Shown here: positions 31,731-55,552 of the stretch, in pieces
Layout of the letters: every line of letters starts with the position of its first letter
Position numbering within the stretch: position 1 is the stretch's first letter
Virus record (IMG/VR): IMGVR_UViG_3300032334_001259
Span: 274,436 to 338,435 of that record
DNA length: 64,000 nucleotides
Reading direction: 5' to 3' (one strand)
Notes under the pieces: generated by a model
What the model was told of the DNA's origin: nothing
Seen by the model: only the letters and a program-made list of their open reading frames with translations
The model's database searches: none
Program-made: the position numbers and the translations under genes

Positions 31731-33608
31731 TTAAAATTCAAAGACTTTTTCTAAATTATCAGAAATTAAAATACCATCTTCAATTTCTTTAACTTTTACT
31801 TTAAGTTGCTTTGTGCAGTCAGTTAAATCATAAATTAAACTATCCGCATGAGTAGTAAGTGAAACTGGGTGCAATGCCTTTTCAATTTCTTCTTGATCAT
31901 ACCCAATTCGTTTCTTTTTTGCCATTGAGTAAACCACCGCACGAGTAACTAACCATGCCATTTCATTAGATGCAATTTCTTTTGCTGCATCTTTTATTTT
32001 TTCAAATATTTCTTCTTCTCTGGTTTGATATTCTGCAACTAGTTCTTCTACTGCCTTATCTACAACTTCATACATGCAATTTACATAAATTGCCTGATCT
32101 TCAATATATTCTGCAGCACGATGTTCTAAACTTGTAGCACTTGCTTTTTCTAAATCATCTTCTGTTCTAATAAATTGAATTGCAGGCACTGTGGCGGCAA
32201 TTTGAAAATTACTGCCTGGCACATATGGAATTTGTTTTGTTTTAGGACTTTTTACAGCGTTGAAACTATTGCCAGCACCTTTTTTCTTACTAGGTGCCAA
32301 GAATCCTGTTTGCCCTTTATCTCTTGTTACGGTAACCATAAGTTCATCAAGTAATTGTTGTGCACGTTTAGTAATATCTTCACTACTGACATTTGATGGT
32401 GCATATTCTCTAATTTTTTCTTTAAACCATTCAGGCATATTTTCACGAATTTCACGTGCATATTCTAACATTTGAATTTCAGTTTTTTCAGCATTTGGTT
32501 TTAATATTTTTTGACGATACTGATCTGGTTGTACATTGCTTTCGTCTGGCAACTCAACAAAAATGCGAAAATATCTAGCACTGTATAAAACACCTAATGC
32601 ACCTGCAATCTTTTTCCATTTACTATCAGTTGCAACATCATAAATTTCATTTTTATAAACAAGACCACTAAAGGAAGCAACAGTAGCATAACCTAATGCA
32701 GTAGTAGTTGGTTTATCTTGGTTAGCATATCCTGAAAAACCACTTGGACCATCATAAACATACCAAATTTTTATACCACTTCCATTTTTGTCATTAACAA
32801 ATTCTTGAATAACCTTATCGGGTTTTGACATAGAAGTATGTGTAATATGTTCTAAAATTGTTAAGAATCGTATATTAAGATGTTTATGTTTTGAAAAACC
32901 AACTTCTAATCGCAAACTGACGGTATTTGGAATTCGGAAAAAACGACGATACATTTGATTGATTAACCATGCACTAGGTTTCTGTTCTTCACCATCATAG
33001 GGACGTTCAACCGTATTTTGATTAGGATTATTACCACAAAGCACAATTGCTGTCCAATCTTCATTGGTATCCCATGGTATTGTTGCAAGTCCAGTAATAT
33101 CCCAAACATCCTTATACCCAGTTGGACTTTCACCATCTGTTTCTACAAAATCATAACGGCAATAATTTGCTTGTCCTTTGCTATTAATTTCTTTTCGTAA
33201 AAGTGAAATGGAAACTTTCTTATTCTTACATGAAATCCAAATCATTCCTTCTTGATTTACACCCATTGCTGTAACTTTTGCGCCGATACCAAAATTTTGA
33301 TCAAGGCGTTGAATTTTGTTGAGTGATGATGATAAATTAGTAACTTCTCGCAATTCTTTGGCAGACATACCAGTGCCATTATTCCAGAAAGTAAGTTTTT
33401 TTATATTAAAACCAAAATCACCAAAAACATTTTCGTTAAATCCAAAAACAGAAGGATCAGTTTCTAGTATTTGAATTTTTGGTTCTTTTGCTGTGATAGA
33501 TGCTTCAATGGAATTTTGAATTAATTCTCGTATCATCATTTCACTTGGGGCTTGTTCAATTGTACGAGTAATAAGATAAGACGTATTTGTAACGTTTAAT
33601 GCAGTCAT
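31731..33608 (-). CDS. GHKL (Hsp90/MORC-like) ATPase domain protein
   Basis: IRELIQNSIEA, NNGTGMS, FGIGAK, WTAIVL. Confidence 0.8.
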   Translation of the reverse strand: MTALNVTNTSYLITRTIEQAPSEMMIRELIQNSIEASITAKEPKIQILETDPSVFGFNENVFGDFGFNIKKLTFWNNGTGMSAKELREVTNLSSSLNKIQRLDQNFGIGAKVTAMGVNQEGMIWISCKNKKVSISLLRKEINSKGQANYCRYDFVETDGESPTGYKDVWDITGLATIPWDTNEDWTAIVLCGNNPNQNTVERPYDGEEQKPSAWLINQMYRRFFRIPNTVSLRLEVGFSKHKHLNIRFLTILEHITHTSMSKPDKVIQEFVNDKNGSGIKIWYVYDGPSGFSGYANQDKPTTTALGYATVASFSGLVYKNEIYDVATDSKWKKIAGALGVLYSARYFRIFVELPDESNVQPDQYRQKILKPNAEKTEIQMLEYAREIRENMPEWFKEKIREYAPSNVSSEDITKRAQQLLDELMVTVTRDKGQTGFLAPSKKKGAGNSFNAVKSPKTKQIPYVPGSNFQIAATVPAIQFIRTEDDLEKASATSLEHRAAEYIEDQAIYVNCMYEVVDKAVEELVAEYQTREEEIFEKIKDAAKEIASNEMAWLVTRAVVYSMAKKKRIGYDQEEIEKALHPVSLTTHADSLIYDLTDCTKQLKVKVKEIEDGILISDNLEKVFEF

Positions 33609-33723: not shown

Positions 33724-33857
33724 AAGTGCGGGTAGGATTTATACCTACAATTTGATGGTATTAACAAGCTACAGATTTAACAGACCCTTGCTTTCTAGTT
33801 CCTTTATTTCCATCATGCCGATACTCCAATACGTGTCCTGCCCACGCCGCCGCACTT
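33724..33857 (-). ncRNA. tRNA-like structured ncRNA A (134 nt, no anticodon arm)
   Basis: Terminal stem AAGTGCGG/CCGCACTT, D-like arm CGTG-GGCAGGA-CACG, T-like arm GTAGG-TATAAAT-CCTAC; own TTGACA-N17-TATAAA promoter; T-tract after. Confidence 0.7.
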
Positions 33858-51420: not shown

Positions 51421-52119
51421 TCAAAATTGCACGGTTATAATATGTTCATAATTTCTTTTAAAAAACCCACGATATAACATGTTCTTTTGTATAACATAAT
51501 CGCTTCCACCAAGGTCGCTGCTGTATTTTGCAAGTTGCTTGAAATACATTGTGCGGCGTTCTACTGGACCGATAACTGTTAAATCACGGTTATTTTCTAT
51601 AAAGTATATATGATTTTGCCAATTCTGTTTATTATTTTTATCTACTTGACTTTGTTCAAGTATGATTGTATCACCATAAACACCACTTTCAACATGGTTG
51701 CGTTTATGTGGTGCACTATTTTTGTAATCTTGTAGGCTTGTAACAAGATAACCACGAGTTACACTTTTAATTTCACTTAATAATTGTCGCTGGTCATTTT
51801 CACTTGTAGCAAATGTAAAATATTCATCAAGTGCGATAGTAACATCTACTATATTTTTAACTTGTGTAATGTTATCAATAAATGTGCTACTGCTTTGATA
51901 AGCATATTTTACACTTTGGTCACCAACAACAATGCAATTATAGTGTTGTTCTAAAAGCAATACAATAGGATTAAAATGGGTAAAGAGTAGGGTTTTTGGT
52001 TGAATTTGTAATCCACCAAATAGTTTTTGTAATATTTCAACTTTTGCTTGTGCTTGTTCTAACCAACGGGTTGGATCTGCTACTGGTTGCAATTTTAACC
52101 AATAATCACCTAAAATCAT
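51421..52119 (-). CDS. hypothetical protein
   Basis: 232-aa ORF behind late box and hairpin. Confidence 0.65.
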   Translation of the reverse strand: MILGDYWLKLQPVADPTRWLEQAQAKVEILQKLFGGLQIQPKTLLFTHFNPIVLLLEQHYNCIVVGDQSVKYAYQSSSTFIDNITQVKNIVDVTIALDEYFTFATSENDQRQLLSEIKSVTRGYLVTSLQDYKNSAPHKRNHVESGVYGDTIILEQSQVDKNNKQNWQNHIYFIENNRDLTVIGPVERRTMYFKQLAKYSSDLGGSDYVIQKNMLYRGFFKRNYEHIITVQF

Positions 52120-52169: not shown

Positions 52170-52367
52170 TTACTTGATAAGCAAACCAAGTTCCTTTAAG
52201 TCTTCATAAAGGATATGATCGTTAGGAATGGTTTCGGTTTTACCATCCTTGACATTCTTGACAATCTTCTCAATATCGGTTGCAGTCATTTCTGTGCAAC
52301 GCTTGATAGCTGCACGAACCTTACCCCACTCTACAGTTCCACGATAACCCATGATCAACATTGTCAT
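52170..52367 (-). CDS. small hypothetical protein
   Basis: Purine-rich SD, sigma70-like promoter. Confidence 0.65.
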   Translation of the reverse strand: MTMLIMGYRGTVEWGKVRAAIKRCTEMTATDIEKIVKNVKDGKTETIPNDHILYEDLKELGLLIK

Positions 52368-52428
52368 ATACTCTCTCTGTTATATTATTTTACCAATATA
52401 CTATATATGTTTTATTTTGTCAAGTAGT

Positions 52429-52624
52429 TTTTAACGGGTGGGACGCTACTCCCACGATGGTTTTAGGATGGCCAAATTTTGGGGTTTCAATTGCCTGACG
52501 CAATCACCATTACCTTCACAGGTCTCTCACCTGTCCAGCCCACTGATATAGGTCTGCAGCCCGCACAAATGGATTCTAGTTATACTCGCTCCAACCTTTA
52601 CGCACAGCCGTGCCGCCGTTAAAA
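52429..52624 (-). ncRNA. tRNA-like structured ncRNA B (196 nt)
   Basis: Terminal stem TTTTAACGG/CCGTTAAAA, arm GCAC-GGCT-GTGC, ACAGG-TGAGAGA-CCTGT, GTGGG-AGTAGCGT-CCCAC; GC-rich, no ORF. Confidence 0.7.
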
Positions 52625-52628
52625 TCTT

Positions 52629-53411
52629 TTACGTCCATAATGATTTACGAAGTTTAACAATGCGTGTCAGCATTTCTGTTTCTTCTTCATCATACTGTTT
52701 TTCAATTTCTATTAAACGCTTATGTGCAATTTTACCACGCTCACGTTCTTCATCTGTTTTTTCTTTGGAAAAAAATCCATCACCATTTGCATGTAACAAG
52801 TCGCAATGTTCACTCCAACCACTAACATCCATAGCATCTGGACGGCTAGGGAAATTCTTGCACCAATTATATAATTCTTCAATTTCTATTGCACTAATTG
52901 CTTGATGTGTTAGTTGTCCATGCTTTTCATCGGTTTTATCAACACCCCAACTTTCATCATAAGTTAAACCTTTTTCCCATGCAATATAATCTAAACCTGC
53001 TTCTGGACAACGCCCATTAACAAACTTCCATTTCTTTTTCCAAGTATTTTTCCAAGCAAGTTCAATTTCAACATGATCAATAATAAGTTGACGCATGCCA
53101 CTTACAAGACGACTATCACTGTCCCACCACTGACCAGGTTTTAAATCCGTTGGCATGATATGTGTGCGATCAATAAAACGATTACGAACATAACGTTTTG
53201 GTTTATTCCAAATTTCAGTTATGCTATAAACAACATCATCTAAAAAATTAGGAACTGTTTCAGTTAAAAAGAATCCAAGTGGTTTTGATTTTTTCAATTC
53301 ATCATCCCACTTTTTCCAACCACCCCATTCAAGAGCAGTTGGTTTTTCAATACCAAACTTTTTACGAAGCCAACGATTTGCTGCACAGTCCATAAAATAA
53401 TAGTTTTTCAT
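52629..53411 (-). CDS. hypothetical phage protein
   Basis: 260 aa, Trp-rich; GAGG SD. Confidence 0.75.
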   Translation of the reverse strand: MKNYYFMDCAANRWLRKKFGIEKPTALEWGGWKKWDDELKKSKPLGFFLTETVPNFLDDVVYSITEIWNKPKRYVRNRFIDRTHIMPTDLKPGQWWDSDSRLVSGMRQLIIDHVEIELAWKNTWKKKWKFVNGRCPEAGLDYIAWEKGLTYDESWGVDKTDEKHGQLTHQAISAIEIEELYNWCKNFPSRPDAMDVSGWSEHCDLLHANGDGFFSKEKTDEERERGKIAHKRLIEIEKQYDEEETEMLTRIVKLRKSLWT

Positions 53412-53503: not shown

Positions 53504-53863
53504 TTATTGTTTAGGAACAGTATGTCTAATACCGTCCCACTTATTTCCTACTATATCATTTTTCTGGCAGAAGTCAATAATATTTTCATAAAAACTATCA
53601 AGTTCACCATTAAATTGTCCCATCAATCCACTGGTGAGTTCCATAGCACGTTGCCAGTTACCACTTTTATATTCACGAATCATATCAATATGCATTTCTC
53701 TAAAGAATGGTAGTGTAGCCAATTCATTTACATTGCTTACTTCAACCAATGCGTGTAGTATAACTGGTTCTGGTAAACCAGGTTGCATAACTGTATCAAG
53801 TTCAAGTATGGTATATTTGTCTGCCATGCTTTTAGCAGTTGCCGCATCAAAAATAATATTCAT
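53504..53863 (-). CDS. stand-alone homologue of the adenylate cyclase C-terminal region
   Basis: Aligns by eye to the last ~110 aa of 29630..31675. Confidence 0.7.
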   Translation of the reverse strand: MNIIFDAATAKSMADKYTILELDTVMQPGLPEPVILHALVEVSNVNELATLPFFREMHIDMIREYKSGNWQRAMELTSGLMGQFNGELDSFYENIIDFCQKNDIVGNKWDGIRHTVPKQ

Positions 53864-55058: not shown

Positions 55059-55493
55059 TTAAGATTTTGCAATAGCTATTTTCTTTGGCTTTTGTGACTC
55101 TGGAATATGAAATTCCAATTTAATCACAAGCAATCCATTCTGCATCTTGGCAGTTTTGACTTCCATATTGTCAGCCAAGTTAAATGTACGGACAAACTTG
55201 CGACTTGCAATACCACGGAAAATATAATCCGTAGGATTTTCATTCTTGATTTCACCAGTAATTACAAGTTGATTGTCCTTTAACGTGATGTCAATATCAT
55301 CATCGCTAAATCCACTTGCCGCAATTTCAATTTCGTAGTCAGTATCACTATTGCGGATAATGTTATATGGTGGATAACTTTGCTGAACTTGCACTGAATT
55401 TACACGAAGCATATCATCAAATAGGCGTTCAAAACCAATTGCAGTGCGATTAAAATGGTCAAAACCATCAAATACTTTAAGTAGATTACTCAT
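55059..55493 (-). CDS. ibpA: small heat-shock protein Hsp20 (IbpA-like)
   Basis: IGFERLFD, YPPYNI, AASGF, RGIASRKF.R.F.L, NGLL.I. Confidence 0.93.
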   Translation of the reverse strand: MSNLLKVFDGFDHFNRTAIGFERLFDDMLRVNSVQVQQSYPPYNIIRNSDTDYEIEIAASGFSDDDIDITLKDNQLVITGEIKNENPTDYIFRGIASRKFVRTFNLADNMEVKTAKMQNGLLVIKLEFHIPESQKPKKIAIAKS

Positions 55494-55552
55494 TTTGTTT
55501 CTCCTTCTAAAAGCGAGTAAGTTAGACGACCCAACTTTGGCATCGTCTAACC
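55494..55552 (-). promoter_or_regulatory. ROSE-like RNA thermometer in hsp20 5' UTR
   Basis: 5' hairpin, then CUCGCUU-UUAG-AAGGAG: U(U/C)GCU pairs SD with bulged G. Confidence 0.7.

What the first reader, a model, noticed from the sequence alone, without database searches (positions are those of the whole stretch)
52429..52624. ncRNA B: larger paralogue of the tRNA-mimic with extra hairpins
Seen: 9-bp terminal stem, same CGG-CG-GCRY start, AGTA/GAA loop-E-like pair in TGGA..TCCA, T-loop-like TGAGAG hairpin, ATTGC/GCAAT and CCAAA/TTTGG helices, and a 3' arm stacked on the terminal stem. It begins 4 nt after an ORF stop, as the tRNAs here do, implying excision from a polycistron. The stems differ in sequence from ncRNA A but keep pairing, which is informal covariation.
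Basis: partly seen in the sequence, partly recalled or inferred. Interest (0 to 1): 0.78.

Follow-up and report, generated by a model that had tools for sequence, protein, structure and literature searches.

The report
New pseudoknotted RNA of jumbo phages

Summary
Window 52429-52624, minus strand, encodes a structured non-coding RNA ("B"). It is the only GC-rich intergenic gap here (49% against 35%). I found 22 distinct variants in about 23 lake-water viral or metagenome contigs, always just upstream of the promoter of a 65-aa gene. On the 22-sequence alignment 94.8% of cells pair. Twenty-one of 51 pairs carry compensatory double changes, against 6.4 ± 1.7 in shuffles and at most 7 when partners are slid.

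Two deep-branching homologues (L120, L121) prove a pseudoknot: AGGUUGG (52597-52591) pairs with CCAUCCU (52471-52465), crossing helix AUGGU/ACCAU. The terminal stem, the 3' hairpin abutting it, the T-loop-like hairpin and the AUUGC/GCAAU hairpin are confirmed. The loop-E reading and the CCAAA/UUUGG helix are not conserved.

Rfam, ARAGORN and phage BLAST find nothing. Covariance models of B do not detect ncRNA A above noise, and sequence similarity equals shuffles (z 0.9), so "paralogue of A" is not shown. Only the junction signature is shared.

In one lineage B has a promoter-like site and a terminator-like 3' end of its own, which favours a trans-acting stable RNA. No RNA-seq run was listed. 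The mechanism is inferred: a tRNA-shaped core with expansions that binds an unknown partner.

The parts
52429..52624 (-). Whole ncRNA B (5' end at 52624, 3' end at 52429). The stem could extend by AGA/ACU to 52627 and 52426, with one A·A mismatch.
   Evidence: Covariance models R1 and R2 hit exactly this place (224.5 and 216 bits).
52616..52624 (-). P1, 5' strand: UUUUAACGG.
   Evidence: Pairs with 52429-52437. It is 9-11 bp in the family. L121 has UUGACGG/CCGUCAA, with an A-U to G-C compensatory change.
52429..52437 (-). P1, 3' strand: CCGUUAAAA. It ends 5 nt before the -35 hexamer of the next promoter.
52602..52613 (-). P2 hairpin GCAC-GGCU-GUGC, placed 2 nt (CG) after P1.
   Evidence: The stem is invariant in 22 of 22 variants. 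The loop varies (GGCU, GAGA, GAGU). The 2-nt linker length is kept in all lineages.
52591..52597 (-). Pseudoknot, 5' strand: AGGUUGG.
   Evidence: Pairs with 52465-52471. The partners elsewhere are L064 GGGGUGG/CCAACCC, L120 ACAUUGG/CCAAUGU and L121 AUCGG/CCGAU.
52573..52590 (-). Conserved, apparently single-stranded core: AGCGAG UAU AACU AGAAU. The motif GGAGCGAG-N2-3-AACU is kept in all three lineages (one main-clade variant, L032, has GGAUCGAG).
52540..52572 (-). P3 arm. Base CCA/UGG (52572-52570 with 52542-52540), an internal loop, and the apical hairpin P3a GG-CUGCAGA-CC (52561-52551).
   Evidence: Pair 60:88 is G-C in 15 and A-U in 5 variants. Pair 71:76 is A-U in 13 and C-G in 7. L120 has AACG/CGUU and L121 has GCCA/UGGU.
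52518..52534 (-). P4 hairpin ACAGG-UGAGAGA-CCUGU. The 7-nt loop is closed by G-C and has U at loop position 1 and A at position 5, which is compatible with a T-loop.
   Evidence: Present in 22 of 22 variants. C-G changes to U-A in L120 and L121. The loop is UG(A/U)GAGA.
52506..52510 (-). P6, 5' strand: AUGGU.
   Evidence: Pairs with 52457-52461. L120 and L121 have AGUGUU/AACACU, with two compensatory pairs. This helix crosses the pseudoknot.
52489..52505 (-). P5 hairpin GAUUGC-GUCAG-GCAAUU. It is variable and dispensable.
   Evidence: All 6 pairs show compensatory changes. The hairpin is absent in L064 and L105.
52465..52471 (-). Pseudoknot, 3' strand: CCAUCCU.
52457..52461 (-). P6, 3' strand: ACCAU.
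52438..52455 (-). P7 hairpin GUGGGA-GUAGCG-UCCCAC, which abuts the 3' strand of P1.
   Evidence: Loop core R-U-R-G-C-R. The stem is 3-6 bp in the family.
52395..52423 (-). Strong sigma-70-type promoter (TTGACA-17-TATATT, 11 of 12 matches) of the 65-aa gene 52170-52367(-). It is conserved next to B in every contig.
53550..53577 (-). Promoter-like site (10 of 12 matches, TG-extended) upstream of tRNA-Thr. It is the likely source of the read-through transcript tRNA-Thr, 260-aa ORF, B.
   Evidence: No terminator-like site was called on the minus strand between it and B.

Best explanation
B is a gene for a stable, independently folding, pseudoknotted non-coding RNA of about 190 nt (190-215 nt in relatives). 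It is specific to one clade of uncultivated freshwater jumbo phages.

Shown:
- Its ends close a four-way, cloverleaf-like core: P1, a 2-nt linker and P2 on the 5' side, then P6, 1-4 nt and P7 abutting P1 on the 3' side.
- About 90 nt are inserted between P2 and P6.
- The start of this insert pairs back into the interior of P6 and forms the pseudoknot.

Inferred:
- In this genome B is made as part of the transcript tRNA-Thr, 260-aa ORF, B and must be cut out. The stacked P1/P7 arm plausibly lets host tRNA-processing nucleases do this.
- In one lineage it appears to be a stand-alone transcription unit.
- It acts in trans. Its invariant elements, GGAGCGAG...AACU, the UG(A/U)GAGA hairpin and GGUAA, would bind a protein or RNA partner. 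Because the phage invests heavily in translation (23 tRNAs and a tmRNA), the partner is probably in tRNA or translation metabolism, with B acting as a decoy, sponge or RNP subunit.
- The partner and the effect are unknown.
For: It is real and structured:
- 22 variants, 94.8% of cells paired, 21 of 51 pairs with compensatory changes, against 6.4 ± 1.7 in 500 shuffles (0 of 500 reach the observed value) and at most 7 when partners are slid. The 20-sequence set points the same way.
- The pseudoknot and P6 are each kept by several double changes in L064, L120 and L121.
- G·U pairs (for example 156:174 G·U in 10 variants and 158:172 U·G in 6) and the fold energies fix the strand.

It is not coding:
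- Indels of 1, 2, 3 and about 20 nt occur among the variants.

It acts in trans rather than in cis:
- In L121, TTGACA-17-TATATA is placed so that transcription would start at P1. A terminator-like stem plus U6 ends the RNA; shuffles give 0.0 such sites.
- The downstream 65-aa gene has its own promoter, 11 of 12 matches, in all contigs.
- At least four different upstream contexts are seen.

Polycistronic context in this genome.

Translation-heavy genome: 23 tRNAs plus a permuted tmRNA.

No known family matches.
Against: - No expression data exist. No RNA run was listed and the 24 listed runs are all marked as probably DNA. Stability, ends and processing are therefore untested.
- tRNA-likeness is only architectural. 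The Rfam tRNA model and ARAGORN do not see it, and P7 has no T-loop signature.
- The family is always syntenic with the 65-aa gene, so a local cis role is not excluded.
- The family is narrow, about 23 contigs. Much of the covariation comes from three lineages, and related sequences can inflate shuffle statistics.
Confidence: 0.42

Rival explanations
1. One reading: B is an enlarged paralogue of ncRNA A (window 33724-33856, minus strand). Both would be tRNA-derived mimics that differ by added hairpins.
For: - Both RNAs share the junction signature...CGG-C(G/A)-GC(R)(Y)... at the 5' end and ...ACCA-(N)-hairpin-CCG... at the 3' end.
- The regular expression for the 5' signature hits only three places in the 338-kb genome, and two of them are A and B.
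- A and B co-occur in at least five contigs.
- A itself is clearly tRNA-shaped: a 7-bp acceptor, a 2-nt linker, a 5-bp arm with a GG-containing 7-nt loop, and a 5-bp arm with the 7-nt loop UAUAAAU abutting the acceptor. ARAGORN calls it at its 80% threshold.
- With filters off, model R1 puts A as the top hit of a 2-kb region with the right boundaries.
Against: - That hit is 8.8 bits, and an unrelated T4 region scores 10.1 bits.
- R1 and R2 find no A at E <= 10 in the genome or in five A loci.
- Sequence similarity is z = 0.9 for this genome's pair and -0.4 to 2.8 over all pairs.
- The interiors cannot be aligned. AACUAG lies 5' of P6 in B and inside P6 in A.
- The third hit of the regular expression is inside an ORF.
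Confidence: 0.2
2. B is a cis-acting element of the transcript. One version: a punctuation or processing site and 3'-end protector for the upstream mRNA. The other: a leader that controls read-through into the downstream operon of the 65-aa ClpS/L12-fold gene and the methyltransferase-like gene.
For: - B is invariably 5-7 nt upstream of the -35 of the promoter of the same 65-aa gene in all contigs.
- In this genome it has no terminator of its own and lies directly after an ORF stop.
Against: - A strong conserved promoter lies between B and the gene.
- The upstream neighbour differs between contigs.
- In L121, B looks like a separate unit with a promoter-like site and a terminator-like end.
- About 100 invariant bases and a pseudoknot are far more than a processing hairpin needs.
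Confidence: 0.15
3. B self-associates through a palindromic apical loop in P3a (CUGCAG or AUGCAU) and works as a dimeric or oligomeric RNA scaffold, as phi29 pRNA or the ROOL and GOLLD assemblies do.
For: - The 6-nt loop palindrome stays palindromic through the change C...G to A...U (71:76 is A-U in 13 and C-G in 7 variants).
- L120 and L121 also have palindromes in the same arm.
Against: - The same covariation is explained by one intraloop base pair.
- Palindromes of at least 6 nt occur by chance in 44-63% of shuffles of this AT-rich arm.
- The complex-prediction job was not folded, so it gives no evidence either way.
Confidence: 0.06
4. B is a self-cleaving or otherwise catalytic RNA that frees itself from the polycistronic transcript.
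For: - It is an embedded RNA that needs two ends made.
- It has a pseudoknotted, highly conserved core.
- Phages are rich in small ribozymes next to tRNAs (own knowledge).
Against: - No match to any Rfam ribozyme family even at E <= 10.
- No conserved candidate cleavage site was identified.
- L121 would not need a 5' cut.
Confidence: 0.05
5. It is not an RNA at all. It would be a DNA-level element such as an inverted-repeat mobile element or a protein-binding site, or a chance GC-rich spacer.
For: The 10-13-bp A/T-rich inverted repeat at the ends resembles the terminal repeats of a miniature inverted-repeat element. The 3' arm overlaps a possible UP element.
Against: - It is single-copy in the genome.
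- Its position relative to the downstream gene is fixed.
- Strand-specific G·U pairs and compensatory changes occur in eight helices and a pseudoknot.
Confidence: 0.02

Closest known systems
tRNA (Rfam RF00005)
   Same: - A terminal stem made from the two ends.
- A 2-nt linker and a short hairpin after the 5' strand.
- A hairpin stacked directly on the 3' strand.
- Placement right behind ORF stops in polycistronic transcripts, like the seven tRNAs of this window.
   Different: - 190-215 nt long.
- No anticodon arm.
- About 90 nt inserted after the first hairpin, and a pseudoknot.
- The P7 loop lacks the U...A T-loop signature, and P1 is 9-11 bp in most members.
- Not found by the Rfam tRNA model at E <= 10 or by ARAGORN.
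Phage T4 RNA C and RNA D (species 1 and 2 small stable RNAs)
   Same: - Phage-encoded small stable RNAs (139 and 119 nt) in a tRNA region, transcribed with the tRNAs.
- Their roles are still unknown (PMC3014915; PMC9697503).
- This is the closest analogue for what B most likely is.
   Different: - No detectable homology. R1 gives only a spurious AU-stem hit in the T4 region.
- T4 RNA C ends in a canonical GGGUUCGAAUCCC T-arm, and B does not.
- The shared 10-mer GAGUAGCGUC is not conserved in the B family.
tmRNA
   Same: A tRNA-like end domain combined with pseudoknotted RNA. The same phage genome carries a permuted tmRNA gene.
   Different: - No tag reading frame.
- No G3·U70.
- No T-loop.
- About half the size.
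- ARAGORN and Rfam are negative.
Bacterial Y RNA-like YrlA (a tRNA-mimicking module bound by Rsr)
   Same: A non-coding RNA with a long terminal stem and a tRNA-like multi-helix module (own knowledge of the family).
   Different: - No TROVE/Rsr gene in the phage genome, while the control genomes were positive.
- No Rfam hit.
ncRNA A of the same genome (window 33724-33856, minus strand)
   Same: - The same junction signature, CGG-CR-GC... and ...ACCA-hairpin-CCG.
- Both have a terminal stem with an abutting 3' hairpin.
- Both occur in the same phage clade.
   Different: - A is 132-144 nt and much more tRNA-like.
- No pseudoknot has been shown in A.
- The interiors cannot be aligned.
- Covariance-model and sequence similarity are at noise level.

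Membership tests
tRNA | Cloverleaf recognised by the Rfam tRNA covariance model or by ARAGORN. | tested here: not met
   No RF00005 hit on 52300-52750 at E <= 10. ARAGORN finds nothing at default or at 80% threshold, with introns of up to 150 nt allowed; it makes only junk calls at 60%.
tRNA | Anticodon arm (5-bp stem, 7-nt loop with U33). | tested here: not met
   No such arm exists. The position is taken by P6 together with the pseudoknot and P5.
tRNA | T-arm next to the acceptor stem: 5 bp and a 7-nt loop with U54...A58. | tested here: not met
   P7 abuts P1, but its loop is 6-8 nt with core RURGCR and has no U...A pair. A T-loop-compatible loop is found in P4 instead.
tRNA | Acceptor stem closed by the 5' and 3' ends, with a 2-nt linker to the next arm. 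| tested here: met
   P1 is 9-11 bp (7 bp in L121). The 2-nt linker is present in all lineages.
tmRNA | tRNA-like domain plus a tag-peptide reading frame. | tested here: not met
   ARAGORN tmRNA search is negative on B. There is no conserved ORF, and indels of 1-3 nt and about 20 nt occur.
Y RNA / YrlA | Partner Ro60/Rsr (TROVE) protein encoded nearby or in the genome. | tested here: not met
   PF05731 is absent from the 338-kb genome, while the control genomes were positive. A host copy cannot be tested.
Paralogue of ncRNA A | Similarity in sequence and structure above shuffled or unrelated controls. | tested here: not met
   - R1 and R2 do not find A.
- A scores 8.8 bits against 10.1 bits for a T4 control.
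- z = 0.9 for this genome's pair.
Paralogue of ncRNA A | Shared junction motif and co-occurrence. | tested here: met
   CGGCGGC(R)(Y) and CC(Y)ACCCG occur at equivalent places. Both RNAs are present in five contigs.
Conserved structured ncRNA (general) | Base pairs maintained by compensatory substitutions on one strand. | tested here: met
   21 pairs carry double changes, no shuffle of 500 reaches this, and 94.8% of cells are paired. G·U pairs are strand-specific.
Conserved structured ncRNA (general) | A discrete stable transcript. | not testable with these tools
   No RNA run was listed, and every listed run is marked as probably DNA.
Any Rfam 15 family (riboswitches, ribozymes, sRNAs) | Covariance-model match. 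| tested here: not met
   Nothing at gathering score. Only chance-level hits at E <= 10 on B and at E <= 5 on L120 and L121.
Repeated or mobile inverted-repeat element | Several copies or variable insertion sites. | tested here: not met
   One copy per genome. The downstream context is fixed in all contigs.

The most novel reading that the evidence does not exclude
B, perhaps together with A, is a new class of phage RNA effector. It would be a tRNA-shaped, pseudoknotted decoy or RNP subunit that captures a host protein acting on tRNAs. Candidates are a tRNA-targeting defence nuclease, a processing or modification enzyme, or a translation factor. B would thereby protect or retune translation during jumbo-phage infection. 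The neighbouring ClpS/L12-fold and methyltransferase-like genes could be functionally linked to it.
Probability: 0.15. Interest if true: 0.8.

Novelty: new variant of a known kind. Interest (0 to 1): 0.55.

Why it matters
Phage-encoded stable RNAs other than tRNAs are almost unexplored. The T4 examples, RNA C and RNA D, have had no assigned role for about 50 years (PMC3014915).

B is a well-supported new RNA fold: eight helices plus a pseudoknot, and about 100 invariant bases. It sits in jumbo phages that also carry 23 tRNAs and a tmRNA. If it manipulates tRNA or translation machinery, or counteracts a tRNA-directed defence, it would add an RNA-based layer to host takeover.

Even without a known function, the alignment and model are ready to seed a new RNA family and to guide probing or cryo-EM.

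Tried and rejected
Database and read searches that gave nothing:
- Rfam at gathering and at E-value thresholds on B and on the divergent homologues: nothing.
- BLAST of B and of 3.3 kb around it against 50,697 phage records: only the tRNA-Thr matches.
- GTDB genome scan with a two-block pattern: 0 hits.
- RNA-seq: no RNA run listed, and the 24 listed runs are all marked as probably DNA. Read laying was not used because it could not show expression.
- Complex prediction (65-aa protein plus B): not folded, so it is no evidence.
- TROVE/Rsr: absent from the genome.

Structural ideas rejected:
The CC covaries with P3 instead.
- Helix Y (AGGUAAUGG with CCANNCU). It was as good as the pseudoknot within the main clade but fails in L120 and L121, where the pseudoknot and P6 covary.
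- A kissing contact between the P2 loop (GCU) and the P7 loop (AGC). The loops change to GAGA or GAGU and GUGGCG without complementarity.
- A palindromic dimerisation loop: not beyond chance.

Relatedness ideas rejected:
- Homology to T4 RNA C: only a 10-mer that is not conserved in the family.
- A third paralogue at genome position 53835: it lies inside an ORF.

Other:
- Supplementary tables of the IMG/VR structured-RNA survey (PMC10690425) are not held, so I could not check whether B is among its 8,495 candidates.
- One search used letters copied from the output rather than references.

Full report
**Where it is**

The window is G000:C1:274436-338435 of a 338,435-bp IMG/VR virus record with direct terminal repeats and 35% G+C. 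Genes around the finding run on the minus strand. Read on that strand, 52624 to 52429 is a 196-nt spacer. It lies between the stop of a 260-aa ORF (52629-53411) and a strong promoter (TTGACA-17-TATATT, 52423 to 52395, 11 of 12 matches) that serves a 65-aa ORF (52170-52367). It is the only GC-rich intergenic gap of the window: 0.49, against 0.25-0.41 for the others.

The minus strand folds at -65.5 kcal/mol (z = -1.96). The plus strand folds at -50 kcal/mol (z = -0.46).

**Is it a known RNA?**

No.
- Rfam 15 at gathering score finds only six tRNAs and a borderline ROSE_3 hit elsewhere.
- At E <= 10 the region gives only chance-level snoRNA and CRISPR hits.
- ARAGORN finds seven tRNAs in the window, none here.
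- With introns allowed and lowered thresholds it still does not call B. It calls ncRNA A only at 80%.
- BLAST against 50,697 phage records finds nothing but the neighbouring tRNA-Thr.

**Relatives**

Several searches recovered the family:
- An exact 18-mer from the invariant core hit 20 IMG/VR contigs.
- The hairpin 15-mer added two more.
- A two-block pattern hit 18 JGI metagenome contigs.
- A search with the downstream 65-aa protein alignment recovered two contigs whose RNA is much more diverged, L120 and L121.

Together these give 22 distinct variants in about 23 viral contigs. DNA runs that hold the sequence are lake, pond and freshwater metagenomes. No bacterial or archaeal genome of GTDB holds it. 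A looser two-block pattern found no further lineage in IMG/VR.

In every contig the RNA lies 5-7 nt upstream of the -35 hexamer of the same 65-aa gene. At least four different upstream contexts occur: the 260-aa ORF stop, a tRNA plus a small ORF, other ORF ends, or a promoter-like site.

**Structure**

On the 20 main-clade variants (alignment A4), a model of eight nested helices plus one crossing helix gives 95.9% paired cells, against at most 47% when partners are slid. Model R1, built from it, scores L120 and L121 at 61 bits (E about 1e-18).

On the resulting 22-sequence alignment (A7):
- 94.8% of cells pair.
- 21 of 51 pairs carry compensatory double changes, against 6.4 ± 1.7 in 500 shuffles, none of which reaches 21.
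- At most 7 pairs do so in the slid controls.

That alignment was fitted to the model and the sequences are related, so these figures are generous. The per-helix evidence is explicit:

| Helix | Main clade | Divergent forms |
|---|---|---|
| P1 | AACGG/CCGUU | L121 GACGG/CCGUC |
| P3 | CCG/CGG or CCA/UGG | L120 AACG/CGUU; L121 GCCA/UGGU |
| P4 | ACAGG/CCUGU | L120, L121 AUAGG/CCUAU |
| P5 | six covarying pairs | absent in L064 and L105 |
| P6 | AUGGU/ACCAU | L120, L121 AGUGUU/AACACU |
| Pseudoknot | AGGUUGG/CCA(N)(N)CU | L064 GGGGUGG/CCAACCC; L120 ACAUUGG/CCAAUGU; L121 AUCGG/CCGAU |

The strands come in the order PK-5', P6-5', PK-3', P6-3'. The two helices therefore cross, which makes this a true pseudoknot.

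Frequent G·U pairs would be A·C on the other strand, so the minus strand is the functional one. Indels of 1, 2, 3 and about 20 nt rule out a coding reading.

Confirmed:
- The terminal stem.
- The CGG-CG-GCAC start.
- The UGAGAG hairpin (P4). Its 7-nt loop is closed by G-C with U at position 1 and A at position 5, so it is compatible with a T-loop in all 22 variants.
- AUUGC/GCAAU (P5).
- The 3' hairpin stacked on the terminal stem (P7).
- The 4-nt distance from the ORF stop.

Not conserved:
- UGGA/UCCA with an AGUA/GAA loop-E. GAA is AAA in 15 of the 20 main-clade variants (A4). AGUA is absent in L120 and L121. The CC pairs with GG of P3, where position 60:88 covaries.
- CCAAA/UUUGG, which exists only in this genome.

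- The pseudoknot.

**Relation to ncRNA A**

I located A at window 33724-33856, minus strand, and found five variants. A is convincingly tRNA-shaped:
- a 7-bp acceptor, with a G-C to A-U change at pair 1:72;
- a 2-nt linker;
- a 5-bp arm with a GG-containing 7-nt loop;
- a 5-bp arm with the loop UAUAAAU, abutting the acceptor.

A and B share the junction signature (CGG-CR-GC... and ...ACCA, hairpin, CCG) and co-occur in five contigs. Beyond that, nothing holds up:
- R1 and R2 find only B in the whole genome.
- R2 finds no A in five A loci.
- With filters off, R1 gives A 8.8 bits, while an unrelated T4 tRNA region gives 10.1 bits through its AU-rich stem alone.
- Global alignment of A and B of this genome is z = 0.9 against dinucleotide shuffles, with a range of -0.4 to 2.8 over 15 pairs.
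- The shared AACUAG sits 5' of P6 in B but inside P6 in A.

A common junction-binding partner or a very old common origin remains possible.

**How it is probably made**

In this genome a promoter-like site (53577 to 53550, 10 of 12 matches, TG-extended) precedes tRNA-Thr. No terminator-like site was called on the minus strand before B. B would therefore be part of a tRNA-Thr, ORF, B transcript and need excision. This is inferred.

In L121, TTGACA-17-TATATA is placed so that transcription would start at P1. The scan tool did not call this site because position 6 of the -10 hexamer is A. The RNA ends in a terminator-like stem followed by U6; shuffles give 0.0 such sites. That arrangement, the separate conserved promoter of the downstream gene and the changing upstream neighbours all argue for an independent, trans-acting RNA rather than a leader or trailer.

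**What it may do**

Nothing here tests function, so what follows is inference.
- The core is cloverleaf-like: P1, 2 nt, P2 ... P6, 1-4 nt, P7, 0-1 nt, P1. This could make B a substrate for host tRNA-processing enzymes.
- The invariant single-stranded GGAGCGAG-N2-3-AACU, the UG(A/U)GAGA loop and GGUAA are the likely contact surface.
- The genome carries 23 tRNAs and a permuted tmRNA.
- The genes after B encode a 65-aa protein and a 232-aa protein. The first has a predicted ClpS/L7-L12-CTD-like fold (pLDDT 89; Foldseek probability up to 0.98, but E 0.07-0.3). For the second, a language-model and structure lead points to class I methyltransferases. Neither link is established.

**Closest analogue**

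The nearest described analogue is the pair of T4 small stable RNAs C and D, which are transcribed from the tRNA region and still have no known role (PMC3014915; PMC9697503). There is no homology to them.

**Verdict**

This is a real, new structured RNA family with a pseudoknot, restricted to a clade of freshwater jumbo phages. Its 'paralogue of A / tRNA mimic' interpretation is unproven. The function is unknown. A trans-acting, tRNA-shaped binding RNA is the best guess, at about 0.4.

Noticed in passing
window 33724-33856 (-): ncRNA A is a 132-144-nt tRNA-shaped RNA: a 7-bp acceptor, a 2-nt linker, a D-like arm, and a T-like arm with loop UAUAAAU. It is followed by a U-run in four of the five variants. 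Five variants were found in seven IMG/VR contigs. ARAGORN calls it only at its 80% threshold, as a 'tRNA-Ile with a 59-nt intron'.
   Followed up: partly
genome G000:C1:330-694 (outside the window): ARAGORN predicts a permuted (two-piece) tmRNA with tag ANDNAPVEMRLAA. The genome has 23 tRNA genes in all.
   Followed up: no
window 52170-52367 (-): The 65-aa gene that always follows B has a confident AlphaFold2 model (pLDDT 89) with a beta-alpha-alpha-beta-alpha fold. The fold resembles ClpS and the C-terminal domain of ribosomal protein L7/L12 (TM 0.6-0.68, E 0.07-0.3). There is no sequence-level hit in Pfam, PHROGs or the PDB.
   Followed up: partly
window 51421-52119 (-): The 232-aa protein two genes after B has no significant Pfam or PHROG hit. 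Its nearest Atlas clusters, and the structure of its closest cluster, point to a class I SAM-dependent methyltransferase fold. This is a lead only.
   Followed up: no
L121 900-1146 (+) and L120 917-1146 (+): These are deep-branching B homologues, about 61-62% identical to this genome's B. In L121 the RNA has a promoter-like site of its own and a terminator-like 3' end with U6. In L120 it follows the 260-aa ORF stop, as it does here.
   Followed up: yes
L005 3790-4110 (+): In some relatives a tRNA gene and a small ORF of about 60 codons are inserted between the 260-aa gene and B, so the upstream side of B is a site of rearrangement.
   Followed up: no
L116 (phage T4) 1409-1547 (-): T4 RNA C contains the loop GUAGCG closed by A-U twice. 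It shares the 10-mer GAGUAGCGUC with the P7 loop of this genome's B. Most B-family members have GAUAGCAA instead, so this is probably coincidence.
   Followed up: partly
window 55488-55549 (-): An Rfam ROSE_3 thermoregulator hit lies just at the gathering score (43.5 against 43 bits).
   Followed up: no
window 31731-33608 (-): The 625-aa protein after ncRNA A carries an HSP90/GyrB/MutL-type ATPase domain (PF13589, E 6e-6).
   Followed up: no
genome G000:C1:~53780-53835 (-), outside the window: This is the third genomic match to the A/B start motif (CGGCAGCAUG). It begins a long hairpin but lies inside a 73-codon ORF, so it is probably unrelated.
   Followed up: partly
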